Positions 4,967 through 57,900 of a stretch of DNA of 64,000 nucleotides are shown in pieces. This stretch comes from Pocillopora damicornis (taxonomy: Eukaryota). The position numbers and the translations under genes were made by a program. Where the stretch lies: NCBI RefSeq assembly GCF_003704095.1, contig NW_020843568.1, forward strand, positions 62,001 to 126,000, written 5' to 3'. The notes beneath the pieces are model-generated. The model made no database searches. It saw only the letters and a program-made list of their open reading frames with translations, and was not told the origin of the DNA. Position 1 is the stretch's first letter. Each line of letters opens with the position of its first letter.

Positions 4967-6847
4967 TGTTAAATTGGTAAGCTTCTGAGTATAGTGATCG
5001 GACTTAAAAACCAACTGATCACGAGTGGCTCATTAAAGGACCGTTGGACTTTGCGAATAAACCATTGCGTATCATGACAATCATATTTTTATTCCAGCTT
5101 TTTACTAATAGAGTTTAATTTCGCTCGAAACTGTCTTGACAAACTACTTTAGAATAACTCAAAACAGGTACATACCATCAGTGGAAACAAATCTTTCTAG
5201 GGCTTTTACCCCGACGACGGTTTTAATTGTTGTACTTTGTCATTCCCACGCGCAGGAAGTTGTACTTGTTTTCCGCTTTTCCCGTGATTTTGTGTCACAT
5301 ACAATACATCAATGGATTAATGTAATTAAACGATTCACGGCCACGCAACTTTCAAAATTTTGAGAAGTCACAACAGGATTTAAAATCGTTCCCAAAAATC
5401 GAACAGATATTAATAGCGAAAGTGCAATATTTTGTCAGCGCTTCTTGAGCATTGAGACGAAAAAATAAGGAGTTGGTTTTCAGTTGTATTTCAATTACGA
5501 GAATGATATGAGTGTCATGACATCGAATGCAGAGGGCTCTTACATGCAAGGGTCTGCTAAACAGATTGGCAACTGACAGATAGATTGCTCAAAACGTACA
5601 AAACACAAAGGAAATTATTTGATTCGGAAAGAAATACTTTTTTTAGTTCCTTTCCTGAACTTTACTTATTCGTGAGGTATTAAAACGTTCGATATCCATC
5701 CAATGTGTGAACGATCAGTTTTGTTGATTTCTGAGCGAATATAATTAATCGAACTGCATTGTTTTGCGTGATCTCCTGTAAGTTAAATTATCTCTTAAGG
5801 GGGATACAGTTGAGCGAAAACTGAGCAAAGAAAACAAATCCATCAAAAATCGGGAAGAGTTGGACTCATTTGTTTAAACCCACGCTTAGCTGTCTCTGTG
5901 TTTTGCGAAGCACAGAAAGAAGCATTCTTCCCTCTCTCGACGACGCTTTTACGAGATTAACAGCCTTGGGGGCACAATATTATCTTTAAACAAAGGTTTT
6001 GAAGTAATATCCTGTCTTTAACTTGTTTTAATAGATATTACTTTGCAGTTGATATTTCTCTAGGTGTACAGATGATTTTACACTTAACAAAGCGGATGAT
6101 TTTTCAATGAAATTCGATAAATTTGATTTTAGCCTTCCCTTGTTCTGTAAAGCTGTAAGATATCAAATTAGAAAATCTTATCAGTTGTTTTATCTTCTCT
6201 CCTCAAGTATGTTTTACCAAGAGTTTAGTTTCGTGTGTCTTGAAGATGTCCACTATACCAAAGTGACTTTAAATTCGCCACATAGTTCACATATCGTACC
6301 TAACGATCTTATTGGCTCAAATCAATTACCCATTGTCTTACTTTTTGCCGCGTCCGAGATCATTTGAGTCCTTGCTCCGCATGAGCGAATATTTCAGAAA
6401 TATTTCATCGCTGATGTGTTGTGTCTCTGGGGCACTCCACCTAGTGCTTGGAATATCGTAGTACGCTGTAGCAGTCGTGGTTCAATTATTCCTTCGCTCG
6501 GTACTTCAAAGGAAGTTCGTGGGTCTTGAGTCGAAGGATTGTTCGCTGGTTGTGCAACACATGTCAGGTACGAGCGCTCTCTCACTCACAGACATCGACT
6601 GCTCTTTTCGCTCCCTGAGCGTGCTACATGAAATCATCTGGTTTTTATTGAGTCGATGTATTTAATGTTGACTGAGCAACAGATCGAAGACTTAACGATA
6701 CCCGTGCCTTTTTGTATCCTTCAGCAGTTTTGGAATGCTTTGTCCCAAATGTTGATGAACGATTGATTTGCTGTGGGCGAACAAAATCTTTTTGCAACAG
6801 TCATTGACAGAATTTCAACTGAATCTTCAGCTGGGAGGTATCGAATC

Positions 6848-30900: not shown

Positions 30901-33900
30901 AATGAGAGCTAACATCCTAACTGTTTTCTTTCCGTTTTGACTGTATGTTTCAGATTATCTGAGCAAGTGTATAAAACTTTGACTCTTATGTCAATACCTT
31001 TGCTTCTTCAAATTTCTTCTAGTGGAGAAGTAGTTTGTTCTAACCAGTCATTTGCGTTGAATAGTTATGTAATGTGGGTGTATTTTCTCCGCTTAGGGTC
31101 TCGTGCAAGAGGTCACTGGCAAAATGTCAGACGTGCAAAACCTCACACAAGTTGGTCGTGAATTGGTCGACTTGTCTGAAACTGGCCAACTTGTGAACTT
31201 AGAAGACCGACTAACACGGATCAATAACGCATGGGAAGACTTGAGTTCAGCGGCAGAACAGCGAATGTTGACCTTGCCTAAGTACAAGGCAAAACTGGCG
31301 GACTTTGAGAAATCTGTGGATCAAATGAACCAATGGTTGGAGGATATGGAAAAAGAAACCAACAAAGTGCAGCCGAAATTAGACGAAGCGGACGTAGCTA
31401 AGAACAAAATTGACGTAAGTGCTTTAAAATTTTAAGTTTACTCTTTAAATTCTAAGAGCGATAGTATCTGATTTAGAATGCAATATTGGTTTCGGTGAAG
31501 CGTACGCGGGGCTTGGATAGCAAAAATTCAGATACTATTGAGGGCAAATACGTACCTTAAGTCAAGATTTCTGTCATATTCGTGGAATTAATACTAAATG
31601 AAATGATACACTTTCTTTCGGTAAACCTGATTTTTTTATGTCTCGAGATTCAAAGCAATAGTCCAGCCCACGCATATTCCTGGTATGTGATAATCATTGC
31701 GATATTACAGTGAACCCTTCTCGTTTTTGTCAAATTTTAGAACAAAGAAATGCCCAATAACTCATATTAAATTAATAGCTCGTTTTTCACTTAAAGAGAG
31801 CAAAAGTAATCTTAGAATAAATAATATGACTTCCGGTTACAAGTGCACTACAAATTGATGGTTCCAAGCAGGACATGAGCGGCTTGGCTCGTCCGTTCAT
31901 GTGAAGGAGAATCAAACTGCAACTTTGCAAATTGCCAGTCACGAGATTTAACTTCGTAGCGAATCCAATCGAAAGTACTCTATTGAAAATATCAGCGGAA
32001 GCCTGCGGTTATTCTAAATATTTCAATTATATCTCCACTACTGTTCGCCACACCACAAACACTTGTAAGATAAGAATATCCCCTCATCTATATCGTCTTT
32101 TGTCAGATGTCAATATAAAATCTTAACATTCAAAAATCAGACGTGAGTATGATGTGATTTTCCTTGCATCTCTACCATCGACTTATCACGCAATCATTTA
32201 GGACCCTCCTGATTTAATTAAGTAAGGGTGGCTCAATATAATTGAATTGTGGGCTATTGTGATTTTTTTTGTTATTGGGTGGGCGTGCAATATCGTAACG
32301 ACTATATAAATCACATCGGATATTGAATCAATAATAACCCTAAGTCGTAAAAGGATGTCTCTTAGTTTCAGGAGGATGTCTCTTAGAGTACTGTTAAACA
32401 TGCGGCAAAAGTTGGTCGAGAATGATAAAAGCATTAGGCAGACTTTCATTTTTTTTCTCTGCTGAAATCATACGAGAATAACGATTGTCGCAATACCTTT
32501 TAGGTCTTGTCAAAAAACCCTTCATCTAAGCTACAAACCCTTTCCTTTTCAAGAATGATAAACATTTGAAGTATCCCCCGGCTTAGCTGGATACACCGTC
32601 ATGTTGGTGGGCATTGTTAACTGGGAAAGTTATCATCTGGGGATTATCTTTCATATGCAACCTCAAATTGTCACGACAAGCTGGTCTTTATATCGTGCAC
32701 GTTAATTGGAGCTCTTTGTTTTAACCCTTGGAGTGACTGGCTTCAAATTTCTCCTCACATCATCATCCTTAAATCAAATGTGAAGGTCATGAGAATAAAG
32801 GAAACGATCAAAAATTTAAGAAGCTCTAAATTGTCAAACAAATTCTCCTTATCAGTACCACAGGAAATGTTAAGAGAACTGTGTCGAGAGCATGAATACT
32901 TATGTAACGGTGTAAAGGGTCAAGTTAATCTTCGTAAAAGTTCCAATATAAACTCCTCCTATTAATTGGAAAGTGTTTTTAAATGGTCGTTCTGTTCGTT
33001 CGTTCTGTTTCAGGAAATACAAGAAAGCATCAAAAATCGCGAGCCTCAGCTGAATCTAATCAGGAAGCAGAGCGGTGAATTCGTTCATCGCGGCCGTCCC
33101 ATCATGGAACCTTACAAGCGTCTGCTGGACAGAAGGTGGGATGACTTGTCAGCTCGGATAGGTCAGCTGGAGCAAGACTTGGATGAGGCCAAAAGGACGG
33201 CCGCGGAGGCCAGAGCTAAAGGAGGAAGAGTGGAAACAGAGATTATCGTCACGGTGAGAAAGTTTTCTCTTTTTTTGTGTAACTAATTATTATGGATGCA
33301 ACAATTTCACAGTTAAAAGGTAAACTATGGAAGAAAATGTATCGAAAAAACCCTCTTGATCTGGTCTTTTTATGTTCAGGAGCGTAAGACAGTGTCGTCT
33401 ACTCCCGGGGGGTTAATTGAAGAATATCTATCGAGAGAAAAAAGGACAGAAACTGACGCAGGACTCCCAATCACCACCATCACCACTCACAGGACCTACA
33501 CAACAAATTCGGCTCCAGGTGAGACTTAGATTACGTATGTAGCACATGCAGCGGTGAAAAGAGATCTCAGAGGAAAGACCGTCCTGTTTATGTCTATTTA
33601 CGAAAGATCAAATGATGGAAAAAGTTATTAATTCAAACAAGCATGGAGAAAAATGTCTGAGTTCCCCGCGCGGAGCCAACCTCAGACCGGTAAAGAGCCG
33701 CAGAGAAATGTTATTGATGTCGGCCGTATACTGGGCTCATACGCGACAAGCGTCTTGTATACTATTGTGATCGAAAGCGTCGTGTGTGTATAAGAAAGAT
33801 AAATAGTTAAGTTAACATAGCATCGAGTCACGAGCTATAAAGGTCTGAGCTTCAATTGCTCTTGGGTGACTCCAAGGTTTTCGTTCATGTTTCCTTTAGC

Positions 33901-36900
33901 TAAGGATCTGTAGATCGCACATTGATCCAAAGTAGGTGTAATCTAAAACGAGTGATGTGGTATACAAATAGTAATAATAAGCTTTTTCCTCAACTCACTG
34001 CCATCTTTTTTCTTCTTTTAGGGCACTACGTGGATGATGACTTTCAGAGGCGTTTAGATCAGATTCTTTTGGATATCAAAGGTTTGGAAGATATTATTCG
34101 TGACATTCAATCTCCCAAGAAATCATCTGAGAAAGAAGTCAAAGAGAAAATCAAGGTAGGACCGGAAACCATTGGAAGAAGGATGTGCACTGACAGAAGC
34201 TCGCATTTGATTTGGAAATCTTACATGAATCGAGAGTTTGGAGACAATTCTTAGTTAGGCTCTTATTGGAGTTCAGTTAGGGAATTTTTAGACAAATTAA
34301 TTTTAATGGCATTCTTAGATCCCTCCAAAAAGCCTAAACCCAAAGTTGGATGAAAAAGCGCTCGGTGAACCTATGTCAAATCTTAGAAAACGCCTTACAA
34401 ACCTACGTGTGTGTATTGGAGGTTTCATAAACGCCTTGTGGACCTCTTCTTTAGGTTGCGGAAATTCAAGTTGACAATCTGCAGCCCCGCGTAGAGCACC
34501 TGTTGAAGGAGAGTAAAACCTATGCTAACAGGGAGGGGGCACGGGGAGATCACATCCACCAGTCGTTGCTTGATTTGTCCAGTCGTTGGGTGAAGGCTTG
34601 TGATGAAGTCGAGAAGCAGAAGAAAGCTGTCCGTATTGTGCCGAACTGGTATCAGTTCAGAAGCAACTTGGATGACATTGATGCGTGGCTCAGAAAGATG
34701 GAGCAGGAAAAAGAATTAACGGTTAAGGTGAGGAGGACTGGGTCGATTGTCATACTCAACACGTGCTGCGGTGTTTTGAATGGTCACGAAGAGTAATCAA
34801 ATGGTTATGAGAGAGAGGAGTCTTCTGAAGGAGATAAGATTTCTTTGTTTATGTTTTTTTTTCCTTATCGTTTTGCGACGTAGGATATAAGATAGACAGA
34901 GAACTTACAATTCTAGTTTGCTTATGAAGGCCGATTAACAGTTGCAGATGGAAGAGGTGGAAATGAAGCAATAAAAAAAATTGAAAGAATTGAAAAATGT
35001 TGAAATTTATGAACTTGAGACTGAATAAAGGAGAGATTTTTCAAGATTAACAAATGATGTCTTACTCCATCAATACAATGATGTTGTCTTTCCTAATTCT
35101 TTAAAGCCGGAGGAAATCGAGGAGCAACAAGCGAAATACGAGATGGTGTTTAAGAATATCGAGGAACTAGACAGACAAGGAGTTCAGATACTGACTCCTC
35201 GCGAGATTGAACGACTGAGGAAGAGATTCAGGGCCATTCACACCAAGTTTATGCAGTACCACAGGCCAGCTGGAGACAGTGAGTGCAATGTCTTGATAAA
35301 CATTTTACTTCTTCTTCTTTTCTTACTACATTTTGCCTCTTGTTTTTCATCTTTCAGCGACTTCTTATCGCATCACAGTTCACACTGGTGATGTAAAGGA
35401 TGCTGGTACGCAGTCGAACGTGTCTGTGATGTTGTTTGGTGATAAAGGAAAGTCGTCGAAACTTCGCTTGGACAAATCCGAGACATACAACACCAAGTTC
35501 TGTCGCGATCAGCTTGACATATTCACCGTGTACAATATTCCACAGCTCGGCGATTTGCACAAGGTCCAAGTTTGGCATGATAGGACTGGACCCAAGCCAG
35601 ATTGGTTCGTGAAGGGATTTTACGTCGAAGACAGATCAACTAGAAAGGTTTACTTTTTCAATTGCAATGCGTGGATTGGTCGAGATGCTGACATGCAAGA
35701 TATCAAGTGTGAAGGTTACACCCTACCAGAAGGTGAAAAATAAGTCTATACAAAAATATTCTCTTTGAGCCCTCAATGCTATGGAGGCAAAGCTTAGTTT
35801 CTTACAAAATTAGTAGCAACAGTTTTTCATTTAACGATTTTGTTCAATATCTTAAAATCAGACTGCCTCGTCAACTCCCCAAAACCTCTCGAAAATTGGT
35901 GATAGCAAACGATTTTTTCTACGAAATCTTCGTTGGTGAAGAAAATCTTACCAAGGGGGTCCCATAAACAAATAACGTATCGTTTAACCTCGTTCATGTT
36001 TAACCATGCTCATAACATTCTACAACTTGAATAGTGCAATAGTTGAATTCAAACACAAAACTGCGACTCAAGGATTGTAATCTGAGAAAGATGTACGAAA
36101 ATTTACCATGGCAAGGATATAAGGGTTTACAGGAAAAGGCCTGGGACTTTACGTGAGATATTCAATGCCACAAAGGTTCGCGTTGGTTGATTAGTCGTAC
36201 ATTCATTACATTTGCTTAACAAATTGACAGTAAAGATGGTGCGAAGAGAATTTCAACCGGATGTTTTCATATAGATTAATTTTGATCAGTGTCTGCTTTG
36301 TTATGTTAAACTCTTTGTATTTTCCACTACATTGCCGCGTTGTCGGCGAGCGTAATTTCATTTGCTTTTATTGGTGCATTTCAATATTTTGCGAAGTAAA
36401 ACCTTAGGAAATGTCGAGATGAACAGTTTTGTTTTCAAGTGTTACCTGTTTTGAAAAGAGAGATACTTATACTTTCCAAATTGTCATTCCAACCACGTGT
36501 TACAAGGCCTGCTATTGGTTGTAGCTGGGCGACTCGCCCAGTGAATAATAATTTCCATTTGAATGGTCGAATTTCAAAATAGAGTGTTCGGCTGGTCGTT
36601 CAAGTTTGATAAATTACGGAAATCTACGACTATTTTACGACTTTTTTGTCGTTCTTAGTTTGTTTTGATTGATGTTAAGTGGCCGTGGCTTATAGTTGGT
36701 TGCACTTAAGGTATGATAGAATTTTTACGAAAATTACTGATCCAGTTCTGTGTACGTCCGCCGCTAACACCATTTTCACAGATTAAGCTACAAATAGCAA
36801 ATTTTGAACTTTATTTCGGCATACCAAACAGATCATTCAGATCATTACATCATTACAAAAATACTGGTTCTGTAATTTTTCGTGATTCTCTGTATTCTGA

Positions 36901-51900: not shown

Positions 51901-54900
51901 TGACCACTATATATCAAAACATTGAGGTGCCAGCGGATTTATCGATGACCAGCAATGAGTTCTGTGTTGACCTGACGCTTAACTGGCTTCTTAACGTCTA
52001 TGACAGGTAACTATTTTGATGGTAGTTTGTAAGCATGGTTACCTTTCTAAAGTAAATGAGTTGGCTATTAGGGATTTCATGAAGCCTCCAAGCTGGTTAT
52101 CTTCGATTTATTTCGATGGATGTTAGCCGACTTCTCATACCAGGACAATTTGACCCGCTCTCTAAGACATAATTAATCACTGTGGGGATGGGCAGGCAGC
52201 AAGTGTTCAATAAATTTTTCCGGAGTAAAGCAAGCTTGAAAGTGTCTTCTTCCCCGAAATGTTCATTTGTATATAAGCGCGCTTTCTTCTCAGAACATCG
52301 CATACTACAAGGGCATTTAAAATTGAGTCCTTTATTTTTTTCTTTTAGCGGGCGAGTTGGAAAGATCCGTGTTCTTTCTTTCAAAATTGGTCTGGTGACA
52401 ATGGCGAGAGCTCATTTAGAAGACAAATACAAATGTAAGAATCTGAAGGTTTGATTTTTTTTTTGTTGACGCTTATATTTCTTCTTGCGTTGTCCAGCTA
52501 AAAAAAAAGGTTTGATGCCTTTTTCAGATTTATACCGGCTTGTGACGGACGAAAAAGGCTTAATGGACCACAAGCAACTAGGATTGCTCTTACATGACTC
52601 ACTGCAGGTGAAGCTTAAAGCTTTTTTTTATTTTTACTGAAATTGTACACCTAATATCGAGACAAAGAGGCGGCTTTTATTCGGTAAATACAGGTATTTA
52701 GTCAGGAGCAAGATATTCTCCTCTGGTCTACTATTTAAACGGAGCCTTCTCTCGAGTTATGGTGTTTCAACCCGATAGTTCGACCGAATTTCAAGATTTT
52801 ATTCCCATTTGTTTGTTTTTACAGATTCCTCGTCAACTCGGTGAAATTGCCGCCTTTGGTGGCAGTAACATTGAACCGAGTGTGAGAAGCTGTTTCTCGA
52901 AGGTAGGCTACTTAAGGACTCCAATCTCAAAGTTGTTGAAATTCACCATCTGAAATCATAAAGTTGTTGCCAACAAGAACACGCGCCATCCTCTCGAGCG
53001 AGCAGATGCACGACTGAAACAATTCGCTTCTTATTGTGTTATTTTACTATGAGTTCTATTTGCCTCCTTGCGATATTTCCCGCTCTTCTGATTAGCTTCT
53101 ATAAGTATTTTAATGAATTTGTCTAACGAGACCCAGTCGAAATGCGCTCTAAAATCTCTATATGGTGGTCGCAATTATCTCGTCGTCGTCCATGTACTAA
53201 TTACCCCAACAGACGCCACAAATCTCGTATGTCGGTCGAGCTCAGTTTAATTCGGCAAGCACAACTTTGGTCATAAGTTCAGAAAGATCGTCGGTTAAAA
53301 GTTTGAAACTGATTGCATTTATTGCTGTCTGTTGTCAACAGGCCGGAGAAAAAAAGACCATCGATTGTGCAGAGTTTATGACATGGCTCTCAGTTGAACC
53401 TCAGTCTATTGTTTGGCTGCCAACACTTCACAGACTCGCCGCGTCAGAGGCTGGTAAGCACTTTACTTCCCTTTTTCTTTTGTCATCTAGTATTTCTCTA
53501 TTTCCTTCATACCCTAGGTAAATTTGCATATAGCCGTGAATTGATTAAAAAATTTCCGATGTTACCTATTAAAAGACAAAAAAGCTTTTGGCTTTGTCTG
53601 TCGCTAATGTTCTGTTTTTTTGGGTCTCTCTTACAGTGAAACACAAAGCCAAATGCAGTATATGTAAAGAGTACCCTATCGTTGGGTTTAGGTATGTGAC
53701 TTTTCTTCAAGATCACCATTCCATGTTTTTTTCTTCTTTTTATTCTCAAGGCCTTCCTTAGTGCATTAAAAATATATCCCCTTGAAATGTTTTTCATTTG
53801 TTGCAGGTTCCGTTGTCTAAAGTGCTTCAATTACGATTTATGCCAGGTACCAAGCATTGAATGTGAAGTGTATTGCTTTGCTAGCTGTTAATAACAAATT
53901 CAATTCTTACTAGTTTCCTAACTATCGTATTTGTCATTCCTCATCAGAGCTGCTTCTGGTCGGGCCGAGTCTCCCACGACCATCGTCTCACTCACCCAAT
54001 GCATCAGTACTGTTTGTCGGTGAGTAGGTGCTTCGTTATTAGATTGACTTTGTTTGATTGACAATTTATCCATTAAGTGTATTAGTTAAGTGTTGCAGCT
54101 GGTTTCAGGTAAACGCGATTTTTTTATGGTCAGCGCGAAGTTAATCGAATTAGAGGTGTGGCTTCGAGCCTGGGCAGGACATATAGACTCAAGACACTTT
54201 CTCTCACAATGCCTTTCCACTGAGAACAATAAACGATGACCCTTGCGCCTGTGCGCGTCTTGGTTTGTGTCAAGGCTTCAGTTGTCAGCTGGTCAAACGT
54301 TCCAGTCGTTTATATTTTTTTTGTTTTTGTTTATGATTTTTGTTTTTTGTTCCACCCTTTTATCGTGTTTGCTGCTGTGGTGCATGTAAATTGTTGCATT
54401 CTGTATTATAGGTAAGATTAAGTATTGTTATTTTTCTTTTTATTAAGACCACCTCTGGTGAGGATGTGTTAGATTTCTTGGCCATGGTTAGAAACAAATT
54501 CAAGAAAAGGCGATACAAGAACAAACCGCCACGAAAACTCGGTTATTTACCGATTCAGACTGTGATGGAAGGAGGAAATCTCGAAACGTAAGTTAAGCAA
54601 ATGATAAATAATGACTGTGAAAATCATAAATGTGCACTGCGGTTGAAGAAACGAATACAAGCGATCCTCGCAGTTATGAACACCACTGAACTAGTAGTTG
54701 AAATAAAGTTTGAAAAACAAATTCAGGCTCGTACGGGATTTGAACCCATGACCTTAAGCAAATGTTGTTTGGTAAACCGCGCAACAGATACAAAACTGTA
54801 TTTTTGTTAGCCCGTCAAAATTAGCCCTTTTATTTCAAGAGGAAATGGACAAGAGGCTTAGTGTTCGTTTCCTTTTGCATTCCTTGTTGTTGTATACCTT

Positions 54901-57900
54901 TTGTTTGCCTGTTATTTTTTCCCCTCTCTGTTGATAATCACTTTCCTTTCTTTTTTTTCTCTTTTGTAGGCCACCCATGCCGACTCCTCAACAAAATGTC
55001 AATCACGAGGTACACAACAGACTAGGCATGTTTGCTCACAGGTGCGTGAATTATTCACATCCCATTTCTCCCTTTACTTTCCATGTATTGTTTGGCAGAA
55101 GAGTTAACTGAGGAAAGAAATTGGTTTTGAAGGGATTGTTACAGGAAAACCATCTCCTCTTTCCTGTTCCGCATACGGGAAACAAGAGCTTTGAGACTTA
55201 TTTGAGTAATCCAGGAGCTAGGTTACTAGACACTATTTAACGTAAATTCCCCAAACAGAAAAGGTGATTTTTTTTCTCCTTTGCTGTCAGGTTGGCCGAG
55301 GCAGAATCAGAAGGAGGAAAATATAATCCACAGGATTTGTAAGTCTTTGCACGACTAGGCAGTCTTATCCTTTCTTCTGCGTTAACATTTCCAACAGAAT
55401 TGGTCTCAGTAAATGTATTGATCTGCCTGGATTTGCCGTCCTGTGGTCATCATTTGATAAGGGCTAAACCTGTATTGTTATTTCGCAGGGACGAAGAACA
55501 TCAGCTTATAGCACAGTACTGCCAAAGGTAATAGCTCATCTTTCCACCATCTATCTGTCTGTTTGTCTGCCAACGTTTCCTAGATGTTTCCGTACGCTTT
55601 TCATTGCACCTTAAATAAAACGTCTCCATGGGCACTTCGGATATTAGCTGTTTGAACTGCGCTGAATTTTTTAAATCTTAAAAAGAAGAATTTACTCTAG
55701 GGAGCGAATTAAGATAAAGTTGCGCCATCGTTTTAATTGTCTGTAGACATTAAAAATTAGTAGACTCTGTTGTTCCCATGTAGCTTGTTGAAGTTGTTTT
55801 TCTTCATTATATAAATAGTACTTTTCTTTTCTTTATTTACAGCCTAAAGAGCGATACAGCAGACGCGGTAAGAACTTCACAACTGATTTACTAAATGATG
55901 ATTTTCTTGAGCCCTTGAAGTTTGTCGCGATGTCTCTTATTTCTGTATTATGACATTCGCTCTTGTTGTCGTAGCCCAAAAGTCCAACTCAGATTGTAAT
56001 GGCTTTAGATGCGGTAGAAAAAGAAGATCTTGAAGCTGAACTTCTCAAACTGGAAGAAGAAAACAGGTCAGTATTTTGTGATAATTTATGATAACGAGCT
56101 CGTCATCTTTTGCCCAAAAGTCTTTATTGCCAACAATGATCAACGTGTTTATTGCCTTCAACCTTATGCATTATTTTTTTGCCAGGGACCTCCAAGAAGA
56201 ATACGAACGGCTCAAGTCTATTAGAGATCAGTCTAGCCTTCCACCTGATGGTGAGGCATCTCCTGGGGGACCTCAGAACAGAGATTCCGAGCTGTTAGCG
56301 GAAGCTAAACTGCTGCGTCAGCACAAAGGTCGCCTGGAGGCAAGGATGCAAGTTTTGGAGGACCATAACAGACAGTTAGAGGCGCAGTTACAGCGACTTA
56401 GACAGCTACTCGATCAGGTGCAGGCAAATGATGGTTACTGAATGACCCAGAGTAGAAATTTCCCAAAAATTCTCCACAATATCTCATACGTATGTTATCG
56501 TTAATTTCTTTTTAGCCTGGTCAAGACAAACAGAGCGGGGCTCAGTCCTCTGAACGAACCACTCCGTCTTCCTCCATCAGCTCGCTCGGAGACGGTCCAT
56601 ATTCCCCGGTAAAGTCAGGTCGATCGGGAAAATCCCGCGGGAATGATAGTGATTCCGAATCGGAACCTGGTGGGACGAACTCAGGACCCATAAAGAACGG
56701 TTTTGCCGGTAAAGGAAGTGAGGATCCAGCTTTAAAAGAAGTCATGAGTCAAATAAGCTCTTCTTTTCCTCCTGATCAGAAAAGTGAGTGAGGAGCGAGG
56801 CACGGTAAAGCACCATTTGGTTTGTTGTTTGTTGTATGTTTTCAGTGACTAATGCTGTTAACTCTTGTGTAGTGTCTGCTGAAGCCTAACCAGTGGAATC
56901 TAACCCTGCATGACTGTTGACTCTTCTGGTAAGAGATCTAAACTTACCCACTTTTACAATCAAACTCTGCACAATTATTGATTTGTCCAAAAAAATTAAA
57001 ATAAAAATAATAATAAAATCCTATCATGAGATCAAAAGAAAACAAAATACAGCAATCACTAAAAACAAACGCCTGACACAGCCCGCGGCAATCAAGATCA
57101 CGATGTAGTCCTCGCTTAGTTGTTCCTGCAGTAACTTGCTTTTTTGAAGGACACAAAGCTCTCCCGTGACCATCTGTTTCAGCAAGCCTGTCACAAAATT
57201 ACTTCTTTGTATCCACCTGCACTTGCTTTGATGCGTCACGTGCACTTGCACTGAAGCTGACTTGATACTTCTAACTCGTAACATTTAAACGTGCATTTGA
57301 AAGAAATAGCAATGCATAGTGCTATGTATACAATTGTTAAGATAAGTCTATTCGTCAAGAAGGTATTGAGAACTGTACTTATTGTTCGCCATTTTGTTAA
57401 AAGGGAAGTGTGCTAATCTTCTCCCAGGTTCGGAACGTAGCATTAAAACGTGCGATACATAGCATAACAAAACATAGTGCTGTGTATACAATTGTTTCAG
57501 TTGTTATATAAGCCTATTCGTCAAGAAAATTTTGAGAACTGTACCATTTGTTCTCCAGTTTGTTAAAGGGGAAGTCTGCTAATCTTCTCCTAAGTTCAGA
57601 ACGTAAACATATTTGTTGAAGAAGGGAACTACTTTAAAGAAACACATCAATTTATGTGCTTGGATAATTCAATTAAATTTACCATGCACTTCGCACATTA
57701 CGTCTATCAGAGCAATCTTCACTTGTATGTGGAAAATTATACGGGGTTGCCTAAGTTTTGCTTTATTTCGTTGTGTGTTTGATCCAGAAAAGTCGCCTAG
57801 TCTCTCAACCAATCAGCTTCAAAACAAAAAGCTATGGCGACTTGGTCACTCGCGTTTTCCCGCGCTTCGAACATTTTCCTTGTTTTTGCTTCGAGTTCTC

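What the first reader, a model, noticed from the sequence alone, without database searches (positions are those of the whole stretch)
35358..35732. A PLAT/LH2 lipid-binding domain exon-shuffled into the dystrophin rod at the R15/R16 junction
Seen: exon 33 ends in phase 1 (GAC A|GTGAGT). After a 79-nt pyrimidine-rich intron comes a 375-nt stop-free exon encoding a full PLAT domain, ending in phase 1 (GAA G|GTGAAA). Exon 35 also starts in phase 1, so the domain is in frame and can also be skipped without frameshift. The flanks [14 protein letters not shown] and [22 protein letters not shown] correspond to human R15 (RWREIESKFAQFRR) and R16 (LNAPDLCAKDFEDLFKQEESLK). Established: PLAT domains (polycystin-1, lipoxygenases, LOXHD1, alpha-toxin) are beta-sandwiches that bind membranes or lipids, often Ca2+-dependently, and proteins. 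Symmetric 1-1 exons are typical of exon shuffling. Human dystrophin has an atypical ~20-aa linker at precisely this junction, next to the nNOS-recruiting R16/17. I know of no characterised dystrophin, utrophin or DRP2 with a PLAT domain. Inference: this dystrophin has a dedicated, possibly splice-regulated, dystroglycan-independent mid-rod membrane anchor, and the vertebrate R15/16 linker could be either the scar of this module or its landing site.
Basis: partly seen in the sequence, partly recalled or inferred. Interest (0 to 1): 0.92.

Follow-up and report, generated by a model that had tools for sequence, protein, structure and literature searches.

The report
Coral dystrophin carries a PLAT domain
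In this coral, and in at least four other anthozoan lineages, the dystrophin gene has one extra, always-spliced-in exon that puts a PLAT/LH2 domain (a fold known for binding membranes or partner proteins) in the middle of the rod, where mammalian dystrophin has a short linker between repeats 15 and 16; no paper I could search describes this.

Summary
Window 35358-35732 is a 375-nt exon, phase 1 at both ends. It encodes a complete PLAT/LH2 domain (Pfam E 3.6e-22; the predicted fold is an eight-strand beta-sandwich that matches the PLAT domains of lipoxygenases and Rab6IP1).

RNA contigs from four independent studies all join 35278 to 35358 and 35732 to 36929. They carry the exon in one transcript with the neighbouring spectrin-repeat exons. 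No skipped form was seen, but assembled contigs cannot exclude a rare one.

The host gene is a true dystrophin. WW, dystrophin-type EF-hand, ZZ and C-terminal coiled-coil exons lie 15-21 kb downstream on the same strand. Against a full-length mammalian dystrophin chain (PDB 9c3c_D), the downstream exons match residues 1997-2039 and 2092-2132 (repeats 16/17). The upstream exon fits best at 1918-1968, weakly. The R15/R16 placement therefore holds.

The exon, its phases and its flanking rod exons are conserved at 90%, 82%, 64% and 56% protein identity in other coral genomes and in two more distant anthozoan metagenome contigs. Substitutions between two corals are mostly synonymous.

The roles as membrane anchor, splice-regulated module and "vertebrate scar" remain inference. 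I rate it a new variant of a known kind, apparently unreported.

The parts
35104..35278 (+). Last exon before the PLAT exon (end of spectrin repeat 15). 175 nt, starts in phase 0 and ends in phase 1.
   Evidence: RNA joints 34724->35104 and 35278->35358 in 4 runs; translation; best place on dystrophin chain 9c3c_D is 1918-1968, weak; orthologous exons in L002, L003 and L007
35279..35357 (+). 79-nt GT..AG intron
35358..35732 (+). PLAT/LH2 exon, 375 nt, phase 1-1, 124 whole codons from 35360
   Evidence: Pfam E 3.6e-22; present in transcripts of 4 RNA studies; fold model and Foldseek matches; orthologues at 56-91% identity
35733..36928 (+). 1196-nt GT..AG intron
   Evidence: Joint in 4 runs
36929..37143 (+). 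Exon with a conserved segment after the PLAT domain (GEDIMTK..LARVRWQ.T) followed by the start of repeat 16. Starts in phase 1 and ends in phase 0 after ..KQEDKLK.
   Evidence: matches dystrophin 9c3c_D 1997-2039 as the top PDB hit; five-lineage alignment A6
37495..37646 (+). Repeat 16 exon
   Evidence: RNA joints
37946..38108 (+). Exon spanning the repeat 16/17 boundary
   Evidence: RNA joints; matches 9c3c_D 2092-2132, E 1.9e-5
50636..50767 (+). Open frame holding the start of the WW domain ([16 protein letters not shown])
   Evidence: Read in the ORF list; not tested with an HMM
51331..52007 (+). Dystrophin-type EF-hand (PF09068) in two exons
   Evidence: the genome search on the own genome: 61.6 and 36.5 bits against a cut-off of 27, at C203:113331-114007, which is window 51331-52007
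53588..53761 (+). Open frame holding the start of the ZZ zinc finger ([19 protein letters not shown])
   Evidence: Read in the ORF list; the ZZ HMM did not report it, and the domain looks split by an intron
56088..56441 (+). Open frame holding the C-terminal coiled-coil exon (..[38 protein letters not shown]..)
   Evidence: ORF list; it resembles the C-terminal coiled coil of the mammalian dystrophin chain, residues 3560-3596, shown in passing

Best explanation
The coral's single true dystrophin orthologue contains a globular PLAT/LH2 beta-sandwich as a regular part of its rod. One symmetric phase-1 exon (35358-35732) encodes the whole domain. It is spliced between the exon that ends spectrin repeat 15 and the exon that begins repeat 16. 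So about 125 residues of beta-sandwich, plus a conserved segment of about 20 residues (GEDIMTK..LARVRWQ.T), replace the short 'R15/R16 insertion' of mammalian dystrophin. These steps are shown: the domain identity, the splicing into the dystrophin mRNA, the position, the single-copy status, and conservation of sequence, exon limits and phases across several anthozoan lineages under purifying selection. This step is inferred: by analogy with the PLAT domains of polycystin-1, lipoxygenases, lipases and Rab6IP1, the domain most likely gives the middle of the rod a second, dystroglycan-independent attachment point at the inner face of the plasma membrane, either to lipid head groups directly or to a membrane-associated partner. 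The best-conserved feature is the loop KSETY.T.F.RDQLD, which corresponds to the membrane/Ca2+ loop of lipoxygenase PLAT domains. I propose it as the binding surface. My confidence is about 0.95 for the anatomy, about 0.45 for direct membrane or lipid binding, and about 0.3 for partner docking.
For: PLAT HMM at E 3.6e-22. The AlphaFold model is eight strands with pLDDT 74.5 and pTM 0.71. Foldseek top hits are the PLAT domains of Rab6IP1, coral 8R-lipoxygenase, 5-LOX and lipases, with TM about 0.7. The closest solved sequence is polycystin-1 PLAT, E 1e-14 alone and 3e-17 with a profile. Splicing: in four RNA studies one contig per run carries both joints, and in X10 a single 13,227-nt contig carries the laid exons from 33014 to 38647 with the PLAT exon among them. 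Host gene identity: the dystrophin EF-hand HMM hits on the same strand at window 51331-52007, and WW, ZZ and coiled-coil exons can be read there. Position: searches are significant on the downstream side; searches are collinear but weak on the upstream side. Conservation: L003 90%, L002 82%, L004 64% and L007 56% identity, each with dystrophin rod exons beside the PLAT exon. In L007 the exon has the same phase 1-1 limits. In the four-way coral DNA alignment the introns do not align. My hand count of window against L002 from that alignment gives 54 identical codons, 48 with only synonymous changes and 22 with amino-acid changes. There is one copy in the genome, and the other 113 or more PLAT matches are at most 38% identical over a full domain.
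Against: There is no functional evidence of any kind. The acidic residues of the loop that binds Ca2+ in coral 8R-lipoxygenase (WFHNDFE) read ETYNTKF here, so Ca2+-dependent membrane insertion of the lipoxygenase type is doubtful; which residues are the ligands is from my memory. That loop is also the least confident part of the model (residues 40-47, pLDDT below 50). PLAT domains also act purely as protein-binding modules (the Rab6IP1 hit). The N-terminal CH domains of the gene were not found on this contig at E <= 0.001; they are probably split into short exons, but this is unverified. Presence outside Anthozoa is unknown.
Confidence: 0.7

Rival explanations
1. The PLAT domain is a protein-docking module, not a lipid anchor. 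It would recruit a specific partner (a small GTPase, a channel or a signalling enzyme) to the mid-rod, next to repeats 16/17, which recruit syntrophin/nNOS in mammals.
For: The best Foldseek hit is the Rab6-binding PLAT of Rab6IP1, and the profile also matches it at E 1.4e-9. The lipoxygenase-type acidic loop residues are not conserved. An invariant and unusually long loop (KSETY.T.F.RDQLD, 4 residues longer than in polycystin-1) looks like a specific recognition surface. The conserved segment after the domain could be part of a composite site.
Against: No partner is known or predicted. The closest sequence relative, polycystin-1 PLAT, is reported to bind acidic lipids (from my knowledge). The two roles do not exclude each other.
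Confidence: 0.3
2. The exon is a regulated cassette: tissues or stages make both PLAT-plus and PLAT-minus dystrophin.
For: The exon is 375 nt with phase 1-1, so skipping it keeps the frame. The upstream intron is very short at 79 nt.
Against: All four RNA runs from four studies show only the inclusion joints, and no 35278->36929 joint was listed. Contigs drop rare variants, so this is weak negative evidence. Protein-level conservation is as high as in the neighbouring constitutive exons.
Confidence: 0.12
3. The domain is a tolerated passenger or mere spacer/hinge in a naturally flexible linker, with no binding role of its own.
For: It sits in a linker that is poorly conserved and tolerates insertion in mammals (20-residue insertion, PMC2873924).
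Against: It is retained with intact frame, limits and phases at 56-91% identity in five lineages. Surface loops are invariant, and 48 synonymous-only codons stand against 22 changed ones between two corals. A neutral passenger would have decayed or been lost.
Confidence: 0.08
4. It is not part of dystrophin: a nested gene, a pseudo-exon or an assembly artefact.
For: None found.
Against: Both joints link it to dystrophin exons in single RNA contigs of 4 studies. The same arrangement occurs in independent genome and metagenome assemblies.
Confidence: 0.01

Closest known systems
Vertebrate dystrophin (Dp427), e.g. chain 9c3c_D
   Same: Collinear rod exons (repeats 15-17), WW, dystrophin EF-hand, ZZ and a nearly identical C-terminal coiled coil. 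The exon end after ..KQE(D/E)(K/S)LK falls at residue 2039, which by my memory of the human exon table is the DMD exon 42/43 boundary, also phase 0.
   Different: Vertebrates have only a linker of about 20-30 residues between R15 and R16. The coral has a 124-residue PLAT domain plus a conserved segment of about 20 residues there, encoded by an extra exon.
Polycystin-1 PLAT domain (6a70_B, 8z6f_A)
   Same: Closest solved sequence relative (E 1e-14 alone, 3e-17 with a profile). A single PLAT on the cytoplasmic side next to a membrane.
   Different: About 30% identity. The coral domain has a 4-residue longer, invariant loop (KSETYNTKF against GDR-AF). The host protein is a cytoskeletal rod, not a membrane protein.
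Lipoxygenase N-terminal PLAT/C2-like domains (coral 8R-LOX 2fnq, 5-LOX 3o8y)
   Same: Same fold (Foldseek TM about 0.7; sequence E 1e-9 to 1e-7).
   Different: The loop that is acidic in the Ca2+-dependent 8R-LOX (WFHNDFE) is ETYNTKF here, so the same Ca2+ switch is not expected.
LOXHD1-like multi-PLAT proteins
   Same: The best-scoring proteins in the 1.84-billion-protein library are multi-PLAT proteins, about 30-36% identical per repeat. The coral genome has such genes (C294, C3130, C2045).
   Different: Those are tandem arrays of 10-20 PLAT repeats. Here a single PLAT is embedded in a spectrin-repeat rod, and no close donor repeat was found.
Lipid-binding spectrin repeats of human dystrophin (R1-3, R10-12; from my knowledge)
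   Same: The idea that the rod itself touches the membrane along its length.
   Different: In mammals this is ascribed to the helical repeats. In anthozoans a dedicated globular domain would do it.

Membership tests
PLAT/LH2 domain (PF01477) | Match to the family HMM above the gathering score | tested here: met
   79.7 bits against 23, E 3.6e-22, profile positions 1-108 of 117
PLAT/LH2 domain (PF01477) | Eight-stranded beta-sandwich fold | tested here: met
   The AF2 model has 8 strands, pLDDT 74.5. Foldseek matches PLAT domains of Rab6IP1, lipoxygenases and lipases, probability 1.00, TM 0.6-0.73
PLAT/LH2 domain (PF01477) | Binding to membranes, lipids or partner proteins | not testable with these tools
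   Needs liposome, lipid-strip or pull-down assays
Ca2+-dependent lipoxygenase-type PLAT (C2-like) | Acidic Ca2+-ligand residues in the loop after strand 3 | tested here: not met
   In the alignment to 8R-LOX, WFHNDFE lines up with ETYNTKF. Which residues are the ligands is from my memory, so treat this as likely rather than certain
Dystrophin/utrophin orthologue | Dystrophin-type EF-hand region after the rod, on the same strand | tested here: met
   PF09068 at 61.6 and 36.5 bits at window 51331-52007. Only 3 such loci in the genome
Dystrophin/utrophin orthologue | WW and ZZ domains and the C-terminal coiled coil | tested here: inconclusive
   Recognisable by eye in the ORF lists. WW was not tested with an HMM. 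The ZZ HMM did not report the split domain
Dystrophin/utrophin orthologue | Rod exons collinear with repeats 15-17 of a reference dystrophin | tested here: met
   9c3c_D is the top PDB hit for two downstream exons, at 1997-2039 and 2092-2132. The upstream exon is weak but collinear at 1918-1968
Dystrophin/utrophin orthologue | N-terminal pair of CH domains | tested here: inconclusive
   No CH hit on contig C203 at E <= 0.001. The transcript contig extends about 6.4 kb 5' of the PLAT exon. Short split exons may escape the search
Exon-shuffled module | Domain limits coincide with exon limits, and the flanking intron phases are symmetric | tested here: met
   Phase 1-1 and 375 nt in the window; phase 1-1 and 384 nt in L007
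Exon-shuffled module | An identifiable donor gene or close paralogue | tested here: not met
   The best other PLAT in the genome is at most 38% identical over a full domain
Cassette (alternatively skipped) exon | A transcript form that lacks the exon | tested here: inconclusive
   No 35278->36929 joint in four runs, but these are assembled contigs, which drop rare forms

The most novel reading that the evidence does not exclude
The mid-rod PLAT domain was already present in the dystrophin of the cnidarian-bilaterian ancestor. It would have been an ancient second membrane or partner attachment site beside repeats 16/17, and the unexplained 20-residue insertion between repeats 15 and 16 of vertebrate dystrophin would be what was left after its loss. 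The conserved coral segment GEDIMTK..LARVRWQ.T could then be the counterpart of that insertion.
Probability: 0.12. Interest if true: 0.8.

Novelty: new variant of a known kind. Interest (0 to 1): 0.6.

Why it matters
Dystrophin is one of the most studied structural proteins, and its rod is usually treated as 24 helical repeats plus hinges. A recent review that compared human and cnidarian dystrophin domain by domain says the human layout is "already found in cnidarians" and never mentions a PLAT domain (PMC10293626).

A conserved globular domain from a membrane- or partner-binding family, placed exactly at the odd R15/R16 linker and next to the repeats that recruit syntrophin/nNOS in mammals, gives a concrete handle on two questions. 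One is how the middle of the rod relates to the membrane. The other is why that linker exists.

It also bears on mini-dystrophin design, because nature has tolerated, and kept, a 125-residue globular insert at this junction. For coral biology, it marks a lineage-specific change in a core cell-matrix adhesion complex.

Tried and rejected
(1) Full-length architecture search. The search for homologous proteins only sees proteins of 0.55-1.75 times the query length. All three searches used the PLAT exon or an alignment of PLAT exons. The joined step was left out throughout; every search was exon by exon, by reference.

(2) The exhaustive representative search is swamped by multi-PLAT proteins. Because it clusters at 50% identity, it cannot show whether orthologues at 55-80% identity exist. 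An inference I first drew from it (no orthologues outside corals) was withdrawn when P0189 and P0196 appeared.

(3) The metagenome scan with the alignment found only further close coral copies at 89-91% identity.

(4) P0197 and P0198 (34-40% identity). P0198/L008 lies among further PLAT ORFs, and P0197 starts a second PLAT repeat. Neither is an orthologue.

(5) The protein Atlas gave only generic PLAT clusters.

(6) The Python machine was lost, so there is no dN/dS program, tree or exon-sum computation. The codon count is by hand from alignment A1.

(7) The origin of JGI sample 3300037190 (L007) could not be found. L004-L006 trace to the deep-sea coral metagenomes of Vohsen et al. 2020 (BioSamples SAMN12856788-811: Leiopathes, Callogorgia, Paramuricea). 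Which of the three hosts they come from is unresolved.

(8) No CH domain was found on the contig.

(9) The nested-gene, pseudo-exon and artefact readings are rejected.

The only mammalian sequence I compared was the PDB dystrophin chain, inside search of solved structures.
Full report
1. THE OBSERVATION

- The upstream exon ends GAC A|GTGAGT at 35278.
- A 79-nt T/C-rich intron ends in CAG at 35357.
- A 375-nt exon runs 35358-35732 and ends GAA G|GTGAAA.
- The next exon starts at 36929.

Only the frame starting at 35360 is open, giving 124 codons. That translation matches Pfam PLAT (PF01477) at E 3.6e-22, 79.7 bits against a gathering score of 23, covering profile positions 1-108 of 117. This is far beyond chance.

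2. IS IT SPLICED INTO THE NEIGHBOURING GENE?

I laid assembled contigs of four RNA-seq runs from four different studies on window 32900-38700. These were coral or marine metatranscriptomes, three poly-A or cDNA libraries and one random-primed.
- Every run has one contig with the joints 35278->35358 (GT..AG) and 35732->36929 (GT..AG).
- The same contigs carry the neighbouring exons: 33014-33252, 33379-33516, 34020-34153, 34453-34724, 35104-35278, 36929-37143, 37495-37646, 37946-38108 and 38470-38647.
- In run X10 a single 13,227-nt contig carries the laid exons from 33014 to 38647, with the PLAT exon at record positions 6445-6817. That leaves about 6.4 kb of transcript on either side.
- No joint from 35278 to 36929 was listed.

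These are assembled contigs, so a minor skipped isoform cannot be excluded. Inclusion is clearly the main form. The nested-gene, pseudo-exon and artefact readings are ruled out.

3. WHAT THE HOST GENE IS

The window is G000:C203:62001-126000. The genome is a coral (the RNA holders are coral or marine metatranscriptomes). The assembly size, 234.35 Mb in 4,393 contigs, fits my memory of a published Pocillopora assembly, but that is only an inference.

Evidence that the gene is a dystrophin:
- The exons around the PLAT exon give weak spectrin-repeat hits one at a time.
- The dystrophin-type EF-hand HMM (PF09068) hits window 51331-52007 on the same strand at 61.6 and 36.5 bits. It hits only two other loci in the whole genome.
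- Just upstream, an open frame reads [16 protein letters not shown], the start of a WW domain.
- Downstream lie [19 protein letters not shown], the start of a ZZ finger, and a coiled-coil exon ..[38 protein letters not shown]... The latter is close to the C-terminal coiled coil of mammalian dystrophin.

This is therefore the dystrophin orthologue, not a dystrobrevin or another spectrin-repeat protein. The N-terminal CH domains were not found on this contig at E <= 0.001. I leave that open; short split exons may escape the search.

4. POSITION IN THE ROD

The PDB holds a full-length mammalian dystrophin chain, 9c3c_D (3,696 residues). I searched exon by exon.

| Coral exon (window) | Place in 9c3c_D | Score |
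|---|---|---|
| 36931-37143 | 1997-2039 | top PDB hit, E 0.017; 0.0014 with a five-lineage profile |
| 37946-38107 | 2092-2132 (..YKDRQGRFDRSVEKWRRFHYD..) | E 1.9e-5 |
| 35104-35277 | 1918-1968 (..RWREIESKFAQFRR) | best place within the chain, collinear, not significant (E 6.9; 1.1 with a profile) |
| 34455-34724 | none | no hit |

The PLAT exon therefore lies where the mammalian chain has residues of about 1969-1996. [quoted passage not shown]

From my memory of the human exon table, residue 2039 is the phase-0 boundary of DMD exons 42/43. The coral exon also ends in phase 0, after ..KQEDKLK. The phase-2 boundary between the coral exons ending at 37646 and starting at 37946 corresponds to human 43/44. 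By that reckoning the PLAT exon sits in the counterpart of human intron 41. That human intron is phase 0, whereas both coral introns are phase 1, so identity of the intron is not established.

5. CONSERVATION

Word-indexed searches with the exon, then with growing alignments, found open frames in other assemblies.

| Locus | Source | PLAT identity |
|---|---|---|
| many coral contigs, incl. L003 | ERZ26692634 and others | 89-91% |
| L002 | ERZ25071792 | 82% |
| L004-L006 | ERZ234995.. metagenomes | 64% |
| L007 | JGI 3300037190 | 56% |

In each locus with enough flank, the PLAT frame sits between recognisable dystrophin rod exons. In L007 the limits are the same as in the window:
- the upstream exon ends ..KPKDD + G|GT, in phase 1;
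- the PLAT exon is 384 nt with phase 1-1;
- the next exon starts ..AG|AT GGA GAG GAC.

L004-L006 come from BioSamples SAMN12856789, -93 and -94. These belong to the deep-sea coral metagenomes of Vohsen et al. 2020: 12 Leiopathes (black coral), 8 Callogorgia and 4 Paramuricea (octocorals) (PMC7068898). So at least one lineage outside the stony corals has the domain. Which host it is, I could not tell.

Identity to the window, in the order L002, L003, L004, L007:
- PLAT exon: 82, 90, 64, 56%;
- downstream exon: 77, 79, 69, 55%;
- upstream exon: 72, 83, not available, 51%.

The PLAT domain is thus kept about as well as this fairly well conserved part of the rod. In the four-way DNA alignment of coral copies the introns do not align, while the exon aligns without gaps and differences fall with a three-base period. 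My hand count of window against L002 gives 54 identical codons, 48 with synonymous changes only and 22 with amino-acid changes. That means strong purifying selection.

Within the genome the domain is single copy. At least 114 PLAT matches exist, only one of them on this contig. None lies at the other two EF-hand_2 loci. The best paralogue is at most 38% identical over a full domain. This is an old, fixed part of the gene, not a recent insertion.

6. WHAT KIND OF PLAT DOMAIN

- The closest solved sequences are polycystin-1 PLAT (E 1e-14; 3e-17 with the profile), then coral 8R-lipoxygenase, Rab6IP1, 11R-LOX and 5-LOX.
- In the 1.84-billion-protein library the highest scores go to multi-PLAT (LOXHD1-like) proteins, at about 30-36% identity per repeat.
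- An AlphaFold model built from the five-lineage alignment is an eight-strand sandwich (pLDDT 74.5, pTM 0.71).
- Foldseek returns the PLAT domains of Rab6IP1, lipoxygenases and pancreatic or lipoprotein lipases, with TM about 0.6-0.73.

The most conserved stretch in the five lineages is the loop K39-D53, KSETY.T.F.RDQLD. It is 4 residues longer than in polycystin-1. It lines up with the WFHNDFE loop of the Ca2+-dependent 8R-lipoxygenase but reads ETYNTKF. It is also the least confident part of the model. I take it as the likely binding surface, and I take Ca2+ switching of the lipoxygenase type as unlikely. The roughly 20 residues after the domain (GEDIMTK..LARVRWQ.T) are also strikingly conserved and may belong to the module.

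7. HOW IT MOST LIKELY WORKS

Shown: anthozoan dystrophin carries a constitutive, selected PLAT domain between repeats 15 and 16.

Inferred: it gives the mid-rod an attachment point at the membrane that does not depend on the WW/EF/ZZ-dystroglycan link. Known PLAT domains are membrane, lipid or partner binding modules, so I weigh the options as follows.
- Direct lipid binding: about 0.45.
- Docking of a membrane-associated partner: about 0.3.
- A regulated cassette: possible but unsupported, about 0.12.
- A neutral spacer: unlikely given the conservation.

8. NOVELTY

Full-text searches for dystrophin together with "PLAT domain", "LH2 domain", or PLAT plus cnidarian found nothing relevant. A 2023 review that aligns human and cnidarian dystrophin domain by domain never mentions PLAT (PMC10293626). 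Nor does the 2015 study of dystroglycan-complex evolution (PMC4582122). Automatic annotations of coral gene models may well show the domain, but I could not inspect them. I class this as a new variant of a known kind: dystrophin with an inserted PLAT module.

9. LIMITS

- No full-length relatives could be retrieved, because of the length window of the protein search.
- No scripts ran.
- The taxonomic range beyond Anthozoa, the isoform question and the function all remain open.

Noticed in passing
window 37168-37361: RNA-contig depth jumps about six-fold (1338 against about 200) inside the intron after the exon ending at 37143. Loose ends occur at 37227-37279 in several runs. This looks like a short C-rich, partly palindromic repeat (..cccctccccaaaccc.. 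/ ..gggaggggtaggtg..) that is transcribed from many copies elsewhere.
   Followed up: no
window 36931-37010; L002:11058-, L003:11777-, L004:1725-, L007:2100-: The roughly 20 residues right after the PLAT domain (GEDIMTK..LARVRWQ.T) are better conserved across five lineages than the repeat-16 helix that follows. They may be part of the PLAT module or a motif of their own.
   Followed up: partly
L004:2717-3019: In the deep-sea anthozoan contig, the two exons that are separate in the window (37495-37646 and 37946-38108) form one open frame. This is an intron loss, or an intron gain in stony corals.
   Followed up: no
G000 contigs C14, C4019, C3735, C1535, C601, C4136, C4382: Dozens of PLAT domains lie in open frames of 350-600 residues, clustered in tandem. 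This is an expanded family of single-PLAT genes with large exons. The classical multi-PLAT (LOXHD1-like) genes on C294, C3130 and C2045 are separate from it.
   Followed up: no
G000:C3101:228217-228728 and G000:C2884:71191-71421: These are the only two other dystrophin-type EF-hand loci in the genome, presumably dystrobrevin or another family member. Neither contig has a PLAT hit.
   Followed up: partly
window 56088-56441: The C-terminal coiled-coil exon is almost identical to the mammalian one over about 40 residues ([30 protein letters not shown]). It is far better conserved than the rod.
   Followed up: no
window 37143 and 37646/37946: The exon ends here (phase 0 after ..KQEDKLK; phase 2 between the next two exons) appear to coincide with human DMD exon boundaries 42/43 and 43/44. 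This rests on my memory of the human exon table and suggests intron positions kept since the cnidarian-bilaterian ancestor.
   Followed up: partly
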